Virus record (IMG/VR): IMGVR_UViG_3300021963_000021
Location: 248,001 to 312,000 of that record
Length of the DNA: 64,000 nt
Direction: 5' to 3' (one strand)
Below the pieces are notes generated by a model. It did not search any database and was not told the origin of the DNA. It worked only from the letters and a program-made list of their open reading frames with translations. Position 1 is the first letter of the stretch; every line of letters starts with the position of its first letter. The position numbers were made by a program, and so were the translations under genes. Positions 16,628-51,497 of this stretch are shown here, one piece after another.

Positions 16628-16799
16628 TCATTTCCATTTTAACACTATCGCCTAACAATACTTTAATATTGTGTTGACGCATCTTACCGCTTAGGTGTGC
16701 TAGAATTTTTTGTCCTGTTTCTAGCTCTACCTTGAAAGTAGTATTCGGCAATACCTCTACTACTTTCCCTTCCATCAAGAGAATATCTTCTTTAGCCAT
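16584..16799 (-). CDS. infA: Translation initiation factor IF-1
   Basis: MAKED...[10 protein letters not shown]...AHLSGKMR...[21 protein letters not shown]. Confidence 0.97.
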
Positions 16800-17371
16800 T
16801 ATGACAACAAATGATCGGCAACGCCTAGTTGGATTACTTCCTCAGCAGACAAATATACATCGCTAGCTGGCAGCAGCTTTTTTCTAATAACACTTGGTGC
16901 TAGTCCAGTAGCGTCTTTTAAAATTCCTATCATTTTGTCATTACAAAGGTCGTTCTCTTTCATAGTGGCTTTGAGATCGTGATACTTATTATCCATGGCT
17001 TCCGTAAACTGATGGCACATAAAACTGGTATTTTTGGCCGCATATCTTTCGCCTTTGTCTCCGCTGGCAAATATCAAAAATGCTGCGCTCATTACAGCGC
17101 CAACGCCAATAGTTCTAACTACGTGTTGACTAGAATGCATAACATCTATCAACGCAAATGCTTGATACAAATCACCGCCGGTTGAATTAACATACAACGT
17201 TAATACCTTTTCTTTAGAATCAAGATTTTCGTAGGTTATCCATTTGATAGCAGAACCGATATTATCTTCAGAAATTTCCCCCGTAAGGAAGTGAATTGAA
17301 TTTTCCAGCAATTTTAAGTCAATCCGATCTTCGGCGTTAAATTCGTCGATCTTTTTCAATCTATGCTCCAT
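16799..17371 (-). CDS. clpP: ClpP protease proteolytic subunit
   Basis: [12 protein letters not shown] (catalytic Ser), MCHQ (His), DVYLSAEE...LG. Confidence 0.92.
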
Positions 17372-41363: not shown

Positions 41364-41392
41364 ATTATACAATCTCTGTGTGTGTTTGTCAA
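41364..41392 (-). promoter_or_regulatory. sigma70 promoter of hsp20
   Basis: TTGACA-17 nt-TATAAT exact. Confidence 0.88.
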
Positions 41393-43263
41393 TCTGTTTG
41401 TTTGAAGTCAGCATCCACTACAGTTTCACCTTCTGTTTTGGATTCTTCTTTTTTGGCTTTCAAATCAAACAATGGCTTGGTGGCAGCAAACAAGTCACTG
41501 ATCTTTTCAGATATTTTGTCCTTGTCGGTTCCTTTGAGTTCTTCTTCAAGAGCCTTAACAGCATCTTCAAGTTTGCTTTTTTCTTCTTCAGATAACTCGG
41601 AACTAAACTGCTCAATATCTTTCTTGATAGAATGGATCTGTGCTTCTGCTTGATTTTTAGTTTCAATCAGATCACGTGCCTTCTTATCTTCCTCGGCATT
41701 GATTTCTGCGTCACGGATCATATTTTGGATCTCTTCGTCAGACAATCCGCTGTTGGCTTTGATCGTGATCTTGTTTTCTTTGCCTGTGTTTTTGTCCTTG
41801 GCACTTACTTTTAAAATACCATTAGCATCAATATCTAGTGTAACTTCGATCTGTGGAGTACCACGAGGTGCCGGAGCAATACCTTCTAGATTAAATTCGC
41901 CTAAGAGTTTGTTGTGTTGTACAAGCTCACGCTCGCCTTGGAACACTTTGATTGTAACAGCAGGCTGATTGTCGTCAGCTGTTGAGAATGTCTGTGACTT
42001 CTTAGTTGGGATCGTTGTGTTCTTGTCAATCAACTTGGCCATTACACCGCCCATTGTTTCAATACCTAGGCTCAATGGAGTAACGTCAAGTAACAGAACG
42101 TCTTTGCGATCGCCTGCTAGAACAGCACCTTGGATGGCAGCGCCGACAGCAACTGCTTCGTCTGGGTTAACGTCTTTACGTGGTGCTTTGCCGAACAGTT
42201 TCTCAACTGCTTCCTGTACCTTAGGCATACGTGTCTGTCCACCAACAAGAATAATCTCATCAATGTCAGCTGGAACAACACCAGCATCTTTCATAGCAGT
42301 ACGGCAAGGAGTCAACGAACGCTCAATGAGATCTTCGACTAGGCTTTCTAACTTGCTGCGTGTAAGTTTAACAATCAAATGCTTAGGACCACTAGCGTCA
42401 GCAGTGATGTATGGCAAGTTAACTTCTGTTTGATTGTTGCTAGACAATTCAATCTTTGCTTTTTCAGCTGAATCTTTCAAACGCTGTAATGCCAGTGTGT
42501 CATTCTTAAGATCGACACCTTGTTCTTTCTTGAACTCGTCGACCAAATAATCCATGATACGTTGGTCAAAGTCTTCGCCGCCCAGGAATGTATCACCGTT
42601 GGTGCTCAGTACTTCGATCTGTTTGTCGCCATCTACGTTAGCAATGTCGATGATACTAACGTCAAATGTACCACCACCAAGATCGTATACAGCAACCTTA
42701 CGATCCTTGCTGTCACGCTTGTCTACTCCATATGCTAGAGCAGCCGCAGTTGGCTCATTGATAATACGTAGTACTTCTAGGCCAGCAATCTTACCAGCAT
42801 CCTTGGTTGCCTGTCTTTGGCTGTCGTTAAAGTAAGCAGGTACTGTGATAACAGCCTGTGTTACTTCGTGGCCCAGATAGTCTTCAGCTGTGGACTTCAT
42901 CTTGCGAAGAACTTCTGCTGAAATTTGTGGGGGTGCTAAATTATTGCCCTGTGCTTCAATCCAAGCATCACCGTTCTTTGCTTCAGTGATTTTGAATGGC
43001 ATTAGGTCTATGTCTTTTTGTACAGCCTGTTCTTTGAACTTACGTCCGATTAAACGCTTGGCTGCGTAGATAGTGTTCTTGGCATTAGTCACTGCTTGAC
43101 GTTTTGCTGGAGCACCTACTAGGATTTCATCGTTAGCGTAGGCAACGATACTAGGCGTAGTTCTTGCGCCTTCTGAGTTTTCTAATACTTTGGGGATTCC
43201 GTTTTCAATAACGGCTACACATGAATTTGTGGTACCCAAGTCGATACCGATGATTTTACTCAT
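41389..43263 (-). CDS. dnaK: Chaperone DnaK (Hsp70)
   Basis: [42 protein letters not shown]; full length. Confidence 0.98.
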
Positions 43264-49312: not shown

Positions 49313-49384
49313 TTATCTGTTCATTACATACATGGTTACTTCAAATCCGTAACGCATTTCAACTGCTTCTGGTTTTGTCCACAT
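49313..49384 (-). CDS. pqqA: PQQ precursor peptide PqqA (23 aa; not in ORF track)
   Basis: Hand translation MWTKPEAVEMRYGFEVTMYVMNR*; MW.KP...R.GFEVTMY signature; AAGGAG RBS; own terminator. Confidence 0.93.
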   Translation of the reverse strand: MWTKPEAVEMRYGFEVTMYVMNR

Positions 49385-50129: not shown

Positions 50130-50489
50130 TTAAGCCTGTCGAGTTAGATAGCTAATTCTGACATTATCTGCGCCAAAATATTCCATAACGCTGGCTTCAC
50201 AGACTTCTATGGCAAATTCCTTACAACTAAAGATATCGATGTAAGCATGTCCAAAACTAGGAACGAAATGCCCAGTGATACTGGAAGTCTCGATTAACTG
50301 TACCAAACTGTAGCCTGCCTTGGCAGGATCATGTTCGGCAAAATATTCGATAATGGGCTCACCGTAGGCCTTCATATCGATACGGCTAACCAATCTCTTA
50401 ACAAAGGCTTCGATGTTTTCTCGATCGTTGATAAGATCGACATCGCAACCTGAACAGTCTAACATCAAATGATAACCCCAATATGCCAT
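50130..50489 (-). CDS. speD: S-adenosylmethionine decarboxylase family proenzyme
   Basis: GYHLMLD, IETSSITGHF self-cleavage region, YIDIFSCK. Confidence 0.9.
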   Translation of the reverse strand: MAYWGYHLMLDCSGCDVDLINDRENIEAFVKRLVSRIDMKAYGEPIIEYFAEHDPAKAGYSLVQLIETSSITGHFVPSFGHAYIDIFSCKEFAIEVCEASVMEYFGADNVRISYLTRQA

Positions 50490-50511
50490 TTCTTTCTCCT
50501 TTTGGCAAATG

Positions 50512-50537
50512 GAACAGGCTACCGAAGTAGCCTGTTC
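50512..50537 (-). other. 11-bp C(UUCG)G hairpin downstream of tmRNA
   Basis: GAACAGGCTAC-TTCG-GTAGCCTGTTC; no U-tract. Confidence 0.75.
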
Positions 50538-50539
50538 TG

Positions 50540-50830
50540 GAAGTTTCTGTTGCTAGGTATTCCTACCCCAGGCAGGGTTTAAGCTGCCAATGCGTAAACG
50601 TTGTCGTTTGCGTTTAGTTTGTTTGCTTGATTTAGGGTCATCGCCTACCCTGCTGTCCACTTTGATACTCAATACCCTGTCGAACCTAATTCAGGCCCAT
50701 CAAAAGCACTTCTCGATTTACATTCCCCCGAATACATCATTTCTGGTTCGGCTAATACGCAAATGCTTTTGGTGGACCTGGCCGGTACTGCCCCGGCGTC
50801 CAGAACACCTTTTTCATTGCTTCACACAGC
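50540..50830 (-). ncRNA. ssrA: Circularly permuted (two-piece) tmRNA; outer ends approximate
   Basis: T-arm GCCGG-GGCAGTA-CCGGC then CAGGTCC-A-CCA ending 50770; 5' end GGGCCTG at 50698 gives G3:U70; tag ANDNVYALAA* at 50611-50579. Confidence 0.92.
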
Positions 50831-50870
50831 AATAATACTATTTAACAGTCTTTGTTGACAGTTGTCAACC

Positions 50871-51497
50871 TTAAATTTTGAGTTCACTATTTCCGCCTGG
50901 CCCAATTATGCCTCTTGGAAATACATTGAAAGCCAAACTGTAACGATTCTCTTTGGAAAGATTTTCTAAAACACTGTGATTTAACAGAGATGGAAATAAC
51001 AATAATGTATTGTTTTCGGGAGATATGCCCATGTCCGAATTGTACTCTGTGTCTTTGCCGTTGTCAATACAAAAAGTATCACGCCAGAGATTGGTATGTC
51101 CTCTTTCTCTATGGAAACAGATAGCACCCGAATTGGCAGGAACTTTTGGGTACCAAACTCCACTGATCATGCTGTTGCTGTGCCAGTGCATGTCATGTTT
51201 GCCGCCAGTCATTGCTAGATTTAACCAACTGGTCGTAATTTCCCAGCGTTGGTCACGTGTGGCACCTATTACTTCGTGTACGAAATAGTCTATGTGTTTC
51301 TGTATCTGAGACTTGAGTCCTTTCAATTGAGAAGCGTCAAGCAGAGTTCGTTTCGGTGATTCGAGGTGCGTATAACTCGTTTCGTCAAAGTTACTGACTT
51401 CGAGATTCATGAGGTACTCAAATGCTATAGGATCTATGCTGTCTGTCTTGGTCTGATAGACAGGTATAGGCCAAAGATTGTGTACCTTATAGTTCAT
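50871..51497 (-). CDS. Putative 2OG-Fe(II) oxygenase (TIGR02466-like)
   Basis: SWLN...HWHSNSMISGVWY...LLFPSLLNHSV...RYSLAFN. Confidence 0.85.
   Translation of the reverse strand: MNYKVHNLWPIPVYQTKTDSIDPIAFEYLMNLEVSNFDETSYTHLESPKRTLLDASQLKGLKSQIQKHIDYFVHEVIGATRDQRWEITTSWLNLAMTGGKHDMHWHSNSMISGVWYPKVPANSGAICFHRERGHTNLWRDTFCIDNGKDTEYNSDMGISPENNTLLLFPSLLNHSVLENLSKENRYSLAFNVFPRGIIGPGGNSELKI

What the first reader, a model, noticed from the sequence alone, without database searches (positions are those of the whole stretch)
50540..50870. Circularly permuted two-piece tmRNA encoded by the phage
Seen: on the minus strand the 3' acceptor piece (T-arm with GGCAGUA loop, ...CAGGUCC-A-CCA ending 50770) comes before a 71-nt intervening segment with self-complementary ends (AAAGCAUUU/AAGUGCUUU). 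The 5' piece GGGCCUG follows at 50698. The acceptor stem forms 7 bp with G3:U70 (Ala identity), and the tag is ANDNVYALAA*. Established: permuted tmRNAs occur in alphaproteobacteria (non-canonical GGCRGUA T-loop), some cyanobacteria and some betaproteobacteria. Inference: the phage supplies its own ribosome-rescue and degradation-tagging RNA, paired with its own ClpP. The alpha-like T-loop next to a beta-like pqqA may reflect cross-class gene capture.
Basis: partly seen in the sequence, partly recalled or inferred. Interest (0 to 1): 0.65.

Follow-up and report, generated by a model that had tools for sequence, protein, structure and literature searches.

The report
Jumbo-phage two-piece tmRNA, conserved spacer
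A 364-kb freshwater/estuarine jumbo phage carries a complete, circularly permuted (two-piece) tmRNA gene, a kind of gene already known in phages. The spacer that is cut out of this one is unexpectedly a strongly conserved, structured RNA module shared by distantly related phages.

Summary
ARAGORN calls a permuted tmRNA at window 50488-50862 (- strand) with tag ANDNVYALAA. Three Rfam models pass their thresholds: tmRNA_permuted 137 bits, beta_tmRNA 120.5 and alpha_tmRNA 93. The one-piece and cyanobacterial models fail.

The window belongs to a 363,943-bp virus record. That record has 31 tRNAs, DnaK, a ClpA-like ATPase and ClpP, but no SmpB and no integrase.

Phage-encoded two-piece tmRNAs are already described (phage Melnitz; 53 unique ones in a phage database), so the basic finding is a new member of a known kind. 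The backbone is beta-type, not alpha-type. The alpha-like T-loop is polymorphic among related phage tmRNAs.

The 71-nt intervening segment was the unexpected part. It is 96-100% identical in most other viral or metagenomic tmRNA genes that carry it, although their mature parts are only 62-90% identical. It shows compensatory base changes. It was not found in 185,579 bacterial species genomes and matches no Rfam family. The closest tmRNA relatives carry a different segment instead, and a second shared module exists. Its function is unknown.

The parts
50840..50868 (-). Probable sigma-70-type promoter: TTGACA (50868-50863), 17-nt spacer, TTAAAT (50845-50840). The predicted start is near 50833.
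   Evidence: Read from the sequence. Relatives have TATAAT at the aligned -10 position just upstream of the first helix strand. The consensus scan instead picked the overlapping CTGTCA/TATTAT pair (50861-50832), whose start would cut into the RNA. Inferred, not shown.
50770..50833 (-). Acceptor piece, about 64 nt. It contains the distal P2 strand UGCUGU (50831-50826), the P2a strand UGUUCUG (50807-50801), the T-arm with GGCAGUA loop (50797-50781), the 3' acceptor strand (50780-50774), discriminator A (50773) and CCA (50772-50770).
   Evidence: ARAGORN 3' tRNA domain. Rfam alignments. Compensatory changes in the T-stem, acceptor stem and P2a across 24 relatives.
50699..50769 (-). Intervening segment (71 nt, module A), absent from the mature RNA. 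It folds as closing stem P0 (positions 1-9 with 59-67) and inner hairpin P1 (19-23 with 38-42) with a near-invariant 14-nt loop. A possible middle helix pairs 11-16 with 46-56, and a possible loop contact pairs 33-34 with 53-54. The leader UGAU precedes G1.
   Evidence: 96-100% identical in most other viral or metagenomic tmRNA genes with divergent mature parts. Covariation tests. Absent from an exact-pattern scan of 185,579 species genomes. No Rfam match at E<=10. Single copy in the phage genome.
50511..50698 (-). Coding piece. It contains the 5' acceptor strand GGGCCUG (50698-50692), the D-loop analogue, the P2a strand CAGGGUA (50679-50673), the distal P2 strand ACAGCA (50656-50651), the PK1 hairpin (50650-50635), the tag frame and the 3' hairpins.
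   Evidence: ARAGORN 5' tRNA domain and resume consensus. Full-length match to RF01850. Covariation in P2a and the PK1 hairpin. A 101-nt metatranscriptome contig identical to 50551-50651.
50579..50611 (-). Tag reading frame: resume codon GCA, peptide ANDNVYALAA, stop UAA.
   Evidence: The same tag occurs in L300 and L302.
50512..50537 (-). 3'-terminal hairpin (11-bp stem, UUCG loop). It corresponds to the last helix of the beta_tmRNA model and is probably the transcript end or a protective hairpin.
   Evidence: Rfam alignment and sequence. The terminator scan did not call it because the tail is not T-rich.

Best explanation
This is a functional ssrA gene of a lytic jumbo phage, in the circularly permuted (two-piece) form and built on the betaproteobacterial architecture.

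Proposed mechanism:
1. One precursor is transcribed from the gene's own promoter. Its order is acceptor piece, 71-nt intervening segment, coding piece.
2. RNase P cuts after the UGAU leader and creates G1 of the coding piece.
3. An endonuclease plus 3' trimming exposes the encoded CCA of the acceptor piece.
4. The two RNAs stay joined by the acceptor stem and the P2 helices.
5. Host AlaRS charges the RNA through G3:U70 and A73. Host SmpB, which the phage does not encode, delivers it to stalled ribosomes.
6. Translation resumes on GCA and appends ANDNVYALAA.
7. Clp proteases recognise that tag. The phage encodes a ClpA-like ATPase and a ClpP of its own.

Shown here: the gene anatomy, the model matches, selection on the helices, the phage origin and the presence of Clp and DnaK genes.

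Inferred: transcription, processing, charging, tagging and the benefit to the phage. The likely benefit is keeping ribosomes free and recycling truncated proteins during a long infection with heavy mRNA turnover.

The intervening segment is not a passive spacer. It is a selected, structured RNA module sitting in the loop of the hairpin that bacterial beta-type genes have at this place. Most likely it governs maturation of the precursor or is released as a small RNA. Which of these holds is not known.
For: Detection:
- ARAGORN permuted tmRNA with tag ANDNVYALAA.
- Rfam RF04321 137.2 bits, RF01850 120.5 bits and RF01849 93 bits, all above threshold. The one-piece and cyanobacterial models fail.

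Selection on structure across 24 phage and bacterial relatives:
- G3:U70 is kept in 24 of 24.
- The acceptor stem, T-stem, P2a and PK1 hairpin all show compensatory changes.
- The distal P2 helix varies in step, for example UGCUGU/ACAGCA, GGUCGU/ACGAUC and UGUGGU/ACCACA.

Phage origin:
- The window lies in a 363,943-bp virus record rated 100% complete.
- Neighbours include a tail-spike-like protein, RNR, an exonuclease and an endolysin-like hydrolase.
- The genome has 31 tRNAs and no tyrosine integrase.

Inheritance within phages:
- Related viral contigs carry the gene in the same neighbourhood while the flanking proteins are only 28-62% identical.

Proteolysis partners:
- ClpP 327 bits, ClpA-like 885 bits, DnaK 987 bits.

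Expression hint:
- In metatranscriptome run X16, a 101-nt contig identical to 50551-50651 has depth 131. The contig on the neighbouring gene has depth 9.9.

Precedent:
- Phage two-piece tmRNAs (PMC9004378) and tmRNAs in huge phages (PMC7162821).

Intervening segment:
-.
Against: - No SmpB is encoded in the phage genome, and the host is unidentified. Compatibility of this tRNA-like domain with host SmpB and AlaRS is therefore assumed.
- The T-loop is non-canonical for beta-type tmRNAs.
- Only the hairpin of PK1 is supported. Its second stem was not established.
- The RNA-library evidence consists of assembled contigs. These cannot show ends or strand and may include DNA, so processing into two pieces is not demonstrated.
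- The ClpA-like protein scores below NCBIfam's equivalog cut-off (885 vs 993 bits).
- The 3' hairpin lacks a T-rich tail.
Confidence: 0.8

Rival explanations
1. The locus is mainly a delivery scaffold. The tRNA-like ends recruit RNase P and 3'-processing enzymes to release the conserved intervening RNA, which is the real payload: a trans-acting small RNA, decoy or sensor. Trans-translation is secondary.
For: - The intervening segment is the most conserved part (0.96-1.00 identity, against 0.54-0.89 for the acceptor piece and 0.17-0.88 for parts of the coding piece).
- It moves independently of the mature RNA.
- A second shared module occupies the same slot in other phages.
- A published case reports a whole tRNA-Ala inside an intervening sequence (PMC11915505).
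Against: - The mature tmRNA parts are also under clear purifying and compensatory selection, with intact tag frames in all relatives.
- Many relatives carry unrelated or short intervening segments.
- No target or partner for the module was found.
Confidence: 0.12
2. The phage tmRNA acts against the host rather than as ordinary rescue. It could compete with host tmRNA for SmpB, or redirect tagging so that host proteins are degraded for amino-acid recycling.
For: - There is no SmpB in the phage genome, so the RNA must draw on the host pool.
- A tRNA-like-domain-only phage tmRNA (DS6A) is reported to inhibit host tmRNA (PMC4131195, PMC11915505).
- Selective tagging of host proteins was proposed for Melnitz (PMC9004378).
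Against: The gene keeps a complete, canonical tag frame and all helices needed for normal trans-translation. Nothing in the sequence distinguishes hostile from ordinary use.
Confidence: 0.06
3. The gene is an inert piece of host DNA picked up by imprecise excision, or an attachment-site remnant.
For: tmRNA genes are common integration sites, and fragments of them occur in prophages (PMC9004378, PMC4383910).
Against: - The gene is complete, with its own promoter and 3' hairpin.
- No integrase is present.
- It is conserved in synteny across distantly related phages with compensatory changes.
- No near-identical bacterial counterpart was found.
Confidence: 0.02

Closest known systems
Two-piece tmRNA of Methylophilales (OM43) phage Melnitz and other aquatic phages (Buchholz et al. 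2022, PMC9004378)
   Same: A phage-encoded, ARAGORN-detected permuted ssrA in an aquatic, non-integrating phage that also carries tRNAs and RNR genes. An extra structured RNA (a glutamine riboswitch) is reported inside the Melnitz gene.
   Different: The Melnitz gene is reported as alphaproteobacterial in type, whereas this one fits the beta model best. No glnA or Downstream-peptide match exists here. The extra element here lies in the intervening segment and belongs to no Rfam family. The genome is 364 kb, against 141.5 kb for Melnitz.
Betaproteobacterial two-piece tmRNA (Rfam RF01850; seen here in Azonexus, Dechloromonas, Accumulibacter, Sterolibacterium and an unnamed clade around MAG OH_SBlB_131)
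   Same: Same gene order, UUCUGGAC before the T-arm, P2 layout, single PK1 hairpin, ANDxxxALAA-type tag, terminal hairpin, and a hairpin-type intervening segment starting AAG... and ending ...GAU. The PK1 region is about 80% identical to the OH_SBlB_131 clade.
   Different: The bacterial intervening segments seen are 4-65 nt and lack module A. Bacterial T-loops are canonical UUCGAUU-like, whereas this one is GGCAGUA. The score is lower (120.5 bits, against 158-235 in bacteria).
Alphaproteobacterial two-piece tmRNA (Rfam RF01849; Caulobacter type)
   Same: Permuted order and the GGCRGUA-type T-loop. The alpha model also passes its threshold (93 bits).
   Different: It scores below the beta model. 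A true alphaproteobacterial MAG tmRNA (L239) scores only 32 bits on the beta model, where this one scores 120.5. The regions outside the tRNA-like domain resemble beta-type genes.
One-piece tmRNAs of mycobacteriophage Bxz1-like phages, Bacillus phage G and huge phages (PMC4131195, PMC7162821)
   Same: Large phages that carry translation-related RNAs, including tmRNA.
   Different: Those listed by name (Bxz1-like phages, phage G) are standard, non-permuted genes. Some huge phages also encode SmpB, and this one does not.

Membership tests
tmRNA, permuted (two-piece) form | tRNA-like domain: a 7-bp acceptor stem formed by the two gene halves, plus a T-arm | tested here: met
   The acceptor stem and T-stem keep pairing through compensatory changes.
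tmRNA, permuted (two-piece) form | Alanine identity: G3:U70, discriminator A, 3' CCA | tested here: met
   Read directly. G:U is kept in 15 of 15 and 24 of 24 relatives.
tmRNA, permuted (two-piece) form | Gene order: 3' acceptor part, intervening segment, 5' acceptor part and coding part | tested here: met
   ARAGORN flags it as permuted. RF04321 scores 137.2 bits. The one-piece model RF00023 matches only the tag region, at 15 bits.
tmRNA, permuted (two-piece) form | Tag reading frame with a resume codon and a hydrophobic C-terminal degron, then a stop | tested here: met
   GCA resume codon, ANDNVYALAA, UAA.
tmRNA, permuted (two-piece) form | Helix P2 that holds the two pieces together | tested here: met
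   P2a (7 bp) shows several pair types across 24 sequences. The distal helix varies in step.
tmRNA, permuted (two-piece) form | Pseudoknot PK1 upstream of the resume codon | tested here: inconclusive
   The hairpin is present with covariation. The second stem was not established.
tmRNA, permuted (two-piece) form | The precursor is cut into two RNAs | not testable with these tools
   Only assembled contigs of RNA libraries were available. They cannot show RNA ends.
tmRNA, permuted (two-piece) form | SmpB partner available | not testable with these tools
   None is encoded in the phage genome. The host is unknown, and host SmpB is assumed.
Rfam RF01850 beta_tmRNA | Full-length match above the gathering score, and the best among the clan's models | tested here: met
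   120.5 bits against a threshold of 84, covering model positions 1-331. Alpha scores 93 and cyano 31.6.
Rfam RF01849 alpha_tmRNA | Best-scoring model of the clan for this sequence | tested here: not met
   93 bits passes the family threshold of 50 but is lower than the beta model.
Rfam RF01849 alpha_tmRNA | GGCRGUA T-loop.
   GGCAGUA lies at 50792-50786. The same loop occurs in an alphaproteobacterial MAG (L239).
Any described riboswitch, ribozyme or sRNA family (for the intervening segment) | Match to an Rfam 15 covariance model | tested here: not met
   Nothing credible at E<=10 on 50480-50900. Nothing for module B or the 137-nt segment either.

The most novel reading that the evidence does not exclude
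The intervening segment of phage beta-type permuted tmRNA genes is a slot for exchangeable, strongly selected structured RNAs. Module A is the one here, and module B sits in other phages. This would be an undescribed class of phage non-coding RNA. Such an RNA could gate tmRNA maturation as a ligand sensor, a nuclease or protein site, or a self-cleaving element. Alternatively, the tRNA-processing machinery could liberate it as an independent small RNA.
Probability: 0.45. Interest if true: 0.7.

Novelty: new variant of a known kind. Interest (0 to 1): 0.5.

Why it matters
A phage two-piece tmRNA by itself adds one more example to a published list.

The intervening segment is a different matter. 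In permuted tmRNA genes it is generally treated as disposable. Here it is the best-conserved stretch of the locus, it has its own covarying structure, it was found only in viral and unclassified metagenome contigs, and it swaps between genes as a cassette.

If it controls maturation, it would be a new way for a phage to switch ribosome rescue and protein tagging on or off during infection. If it is released as a small RNA, it would show that phages use the tmRNA precursor as a processing scaffold for other RNAs. Both ideas can be tested directly with a roughly 330-nt transcript.

Tried and rejected
- GenBank phages: a blastn search with the 601-nt locus found no match.
- Wasted scan: one viral scan used a miscounted pattern with one G too many. 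It was repeated correctly.
- Second copy in the genome: a 16-nt exact repeat of the module's loop at genome 59962-59977 lies inside an open reading frame, and the flanks do not match. I treated it as chance. The covariance model finds only the one copy.
- Known ribozymes and riboswitches: there are no Rfam hits. By eye, the hammerhead core is not satisfied (AUGAUGU instead of CUGANGA). An HDV-like fold would need its P4 and P2 strands inside the variable tmRNA sequence. The pistol layout does not fit either.
- Loop pairing with P2a: the loop CCAGAA could pair with the P2a strand UUCUGG as a folding switch. I rejected this because the loop is invariant while that strand differs in at least 5 of 15 sequences.
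- Small peptide in the segment: I rejected this because the variable positions give non-synonymous changes while the rest is invariant at all codon positions.
- The + strand ORF 50590-50835 is an artefact of nucleotide conservation.
- Host naming: the bacterial clade with the most similar tmRNA (around MAG OH_SBlB_131) carries no names in the tools, and it has no AMO gene. The host remains unidentified.
- The 2004 paper describing the beta lineage (PMC516066) is not held.
- The 137-nt segment of L300 and L302 is not shared by other contigs at exact-30-mer level.
- Thermodynamic stability of the segment alone is unremarkable (z = -0.27).

Full report
**1. The observation**

- The T-arm is GCCGG / GGCAGUA / CCGGC at 50797-50781.
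- The 3' acceptor strand CAGGUCC lies at 50780-50774, followed by discriminator A and CCA ending at 50770.
- The intervening segment is 71 nt (50769-50699).
- The 5' acceptor strand GGGCCUG starts at 50698.
- The two strands form 7 pairs with G3:U70.

ARAGORN calls a permuted tmRNA at 50488-50862 with tag ANDNVYALAA and stop, with the tag frame at 50611-50579.

Rfam scores are as follows.
- tmRNA_permuted: 137.2 bits (threshold 47).
- beta_tmRNA: 120.5 bits over all 331 model positions (threshold 84).
- alpha_tmRNA: 93 bits (threshold 50).
- cyano_tmRNA: 31.6 bits, which fails.
- The one-piece model: 15 bits on the tag region only, which fails.

**2. Context**

The window is bases 248001-312000 of a single-contig virus record of 363,943 bp, rated 100% complete. 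The same contig appears in a metagenome collection as Ga0222712_10000006.

Genes around the tmRNA, all on the same strand, are these.
- S-adenosylmethionine decarboxylase, directly downstream.
- A 2OG-Fe(II) oxygenase, directly upstream.
- A DUF454 protein.
- Both ribonucleotide reductase subunits.
- A tail-spike-like protein.
- A PD-(D/E)XK exonuclease.
- A cell-wall hydrolase.
- DnaK.
- A pqqA-like peptide gene at 49328-49384.

The whole genome has 31 tRNA genes, 28 of them in one cluster. It also encodes a ClpA-like ATPase of 780 aa, a true ClpP and a second ClpP-like protein. It has no SmpB and no tyrosine integrase.

Near-identical DNA occurs in freshwater, estuarine, riverine and "marine"-labelled metagenomes from 17 studies. 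No phage in the GenBank-derived collection matches the locus.

**3. Is the RNA under selection as a tmRNA?**

I collected relatives by pattern scans of viral, metagenome and genome collections and from the genomes related to one bacterial hit.

In a 24-sequence alignment of phage and bacterial beta-type genes, with the intervening segment removed, the results were these.
- G3:U70 is kept in all 24.
- The acceptor stem, T-stem, 7-bp P2a helix and PK1 hairpin keep pairing through compensatory changes.
- The distal P2 helix that ties the 5' end of the acceptor piece to the coding piece also changes in step. Examples are UGCUGU/ACAGCA here and GGUCGU/ACGAUC or UGUGGU/ACCACA in others.

All relatives keep an intact tag frame of the ANDxxxALAA type.

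By homology with relatives that have TATAAT at the same place, the promoter is TTGACA, 17 nt, TTAAAT (50868-50840). The RNA would then start a few bases before the first helix strand. The consensus scan picked an overlapping weaker pair.

The last helix (50537-50512) corresponds to the terminal hairpin of the beta model.

In one metatranscriptome (X16), a 101-nt contig identical to 50551-50651 has word depth 131, against 9.9 for the contig on the neighbouring gene. This hints at expression as a stable RNA. Contigs cannot show ends, strand or processing, and DNA may be present in such libraries.

**4. Alpha or beta?**

- The beta model scores higher than the alpha model.
- A true alphaproteobacterial MAG tmRNA (L239) scores only 32 bits on the beta model.
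- The bacterial sequences most like the phage gene outside the tRNA-like domain are beta-type. The PK1 region is about 80% identical to the clade around MAG OH_SBlB_131, whose roughly 20 relatives all score 158-168 bits on the beta model.
- Within the clade of related phage tmRNAs, the T-loop is UUCGAUU-like, UGCAAAU-like, GGCAGUA or GGCGGUA. The D-loop changes with it: YGG-UUUCGAC goes with canonical loops and WAG-(U/G)UUCGAC with GGCRGUA.

The alpha-like T-loop is therefore a polymorphism, or an exchanged module, of the tRNA-like domain inside a beta-type phage gene family. It is not evidence that the gene as a whole came from an alphaproteobacterium.

I could not name the host. The nearest bacterial clade is unnamed in the tools and has no ammonia monooxygenase.

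**5. What is already known**

- Buchholz et al. 2022 (PMC9004378) describe the two-piece tmRNA of phage Melnitz. They counted 53 unique two-piece tmRNAs among 18,146 phage genomes, 50 of them from aquatic phages.
- Al-Shayeb et al. 2020 (PMC7162821) report tmRNAs, and sometimes SmpB, in huge phages.
- The 2025 tmRNA database (PMC11915505) lists 79 unique phage sequences.

A phage-encoded permuted tmRNA is thus a known kind of gene.

**6. The intervening segment**

This is where the evidence went beyond the finding as written.

*Distribution.*
- A 29-base pattern from its centre hits 11 IMG/VR contigs and 16 metagenome contigs, one of which is this genome itself.
- It hits no genome among 185,579 bacterial and archaeal species.
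- Every hit lies between the CCA and the G1 of a permuted tmRNA.
- The pattern fixes 23 of the 71 positions. A second scan used only the acceptor end plus the first 12 bases of the segment. It recovered 10 tmRNA contigs, all of which are also among the hits, so the same centre travels with those first bases.

*Conservation.* Identity of this segment to the others is 0.96-1.00 in most copies and 0.75-0.87 in three divergent ones. For comparison:

| Region | Identity to relatives |
|---|---|
| Acceptor piece | 0.54-0.89 |
| Parts of the coding piece | 0.39-0.90 |
| 3' tail | 0.17-0.43 |
| Flanking proteins | 28-62% |

Three linker positions (57-59 of the segment) are free to vary, with seven variants among 15 sequences. 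The constancy elsewhere therefore reflects selection and not just recency.

*Structure.* The variation that exists is structured.
- The closing stem (1-9 with 59-67) and the inner hairpin (19-23 with 38-42) keep pairing through double changes. Examples are CCGAA/UUCGG becoming CUGAA/UUCAG, CUGCA/UGCAG, CCGCA/UGCGG and CCACA/UGUGG.
- 98-99% of cells are paired, against 90-93% in shuffles and 36-56% when partners are slid. Between 7 and 10 pairs show double changes.
- RNAalifold finds the same two helices unaided. It adds a middle helix (11-16 with 46-56) that is supported only by one-sided changes.
- A loop position (34) covaries with position 53 (U-A to C-G in three sequences), which suggests a tertiary contact. 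These three sequences may represent a single event.
- G.U pairs place the structure on the tmRNA strand.

*Other tests.*
- No Rfam family matches.
- The fold is not thermodynamically unusual.
- A covariance model of the module finds only this one copy in the phage genome.
- That model finds nothing in 100 other viral loci, most of which carry other permuted tmRNAs.

**7. The segment behaves as a cassette**

- The tmRNAs closest to this one in mature sequence, with the same tag, are L300 and L302 (acceptor piece 97%, coding piece 90%). They carry an unrelated 137-nt segment.
- The closest phage by proteins is L131 (RNR 70-74%, syntenic). It also has a different segment.
- Contigs from two RNA libraries show a near-identical strain in which positions 5-67 of the segment are replaced by 215 other letters.
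- A second, different conserved module of about 62 nt occupies the same slot in 9 further viral contigs with varied T-arms and acceptor stems. It too has no Rfam match.
- All these segments share the ends AAAGCA... and ...UGCUUUUGAU, which form the closing stem and the UGAU leader before G1.
- Bacterial beta-type genes have only a short hairpin or a few bases there.

The simplest description is that the loop of the ancestral spacer hairpin has become a slot for exchangeable structured RNAs in these phages.

**8. Mechanism and its limits**

Steps shown:
- the anatomy;
- the family match;
- selection on the helices;
- the phage origin;
- the Clp and DnaK genes;
- the conservation and structure of the segment.

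Steps inferred from established tmRNA biology:
- RNase P cleavage before G1, which U at -1 fits;
- 3' maturation to the encoded CCA;
- charging by AlaRS through G3:U70;
- delivery by host SmpB;
- tagging, and degradation by ClpXP or ClpAP.

After RNase P cleavage, the segment would remain on the acceptor piece as a tightly folded 3' trailer with only a 4-nt overhang. An endonucleolytic step near the CCA therefore seems necessary. The module may act at this point, as a nuclease or protein site, a ligand-dependent gate or a self-cleaving element. Alternatively it may simply be released as a stable RNA. I could not discriminate among these.

**9. Verdict**

The finding is real and the core interpretation is right, but the kind is already known. 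The alpha-capture idea is not supported. The added value is the conserved, phage-restricted, exchangeable intervening module, which I could not find described in the papers searched.

Noticed in passing
window 49328-49384 (-): A pqqA-like peptide gene (PF08042, 33.7 bits, cut-off 21.1) lies about 1.1 kb downstream of the tmRNA in a phage genome. Its class affiliation was not tested.
   Followed up: partly
G000 genome 232111-237855 (-), 339529-339603 (+), 350564-350727 (+); outside the window: The genome has 31 tRNA genes, 28 of them in one cluster covering most amino acids. One has a CUA anticodon (an amber-suppressor type, labelled Pyl by ARAGORN). Whether TAG is recoded in any genes was not examined.
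   Followed up: no
window 41389-43263 (-), window 16799-17371 (-); genome 181035-183377 (-) and 330174-330821 (-): The phage carries its own protein-quality-control set: DnaK (987 bits), a ClpA-like Hsp100 (885 bits, below the equivalog cut-off), a true ClpP and a divergent ClpP-like protein. The ClpP-like gene sits next to the tmRNA in three related contigs (L140, L142, L146).
   Followed up: partly
L305-L313 (IMG/VR contigs): A second conserved intervening module (about 62 nt, containing ...UUAUUUAACGGCAUCGGUCACUGAGAACUAA...) occupies the same slot in 9 viral contigs whose tmRNAs have different T-arms and acceptor stems. It has no Rfam match. I did not work out its structure; the one stem I guessed by eye (UCGGUG/CACUGA) has a mismatch in L305.
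   Followed up: partly
window 50703-50765; runs X9 and X16: Contigs from RNA libraries show a near-identical strain in which the interior of the intervening segment is replaced by 215 other letters. The inserted sequence could not be retrieved.
   Followed up: no
window 50130-50489 (-) and 50871-51497 (-): The tmRNA is flanked by an S-adenosylmethionine decarboxylase and a 2OG-Fe(II) oxygenase, auxiliary metabolic genes typical of large aquatic phages.
   Followed up: no
G000 genome 59962-59977 (-): A 16-nt exact copy of the module's loop sequence (CCAGAAATGATGTATT) lies inside an open reading frame. The flanks do not match, so this is probably chance (blast E 0.004).
   Followed up: yes
genomes G001, G005-G025 (relatives of MAG 'Proteobacteria bacterium OH_SBlB_131'): An unnamed bacterial clade of about 20 genomes (2.6-4.9 Mb). 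In the nine members read, the beta-type two-piece tmRNA has a low G+C content, the tag ANDESYALAA and intervening segments of 32-65 nt. This is the nearest bacterial match to the phage gene. No AMO gene was found in the five genomes tested.
   Followed up: partly
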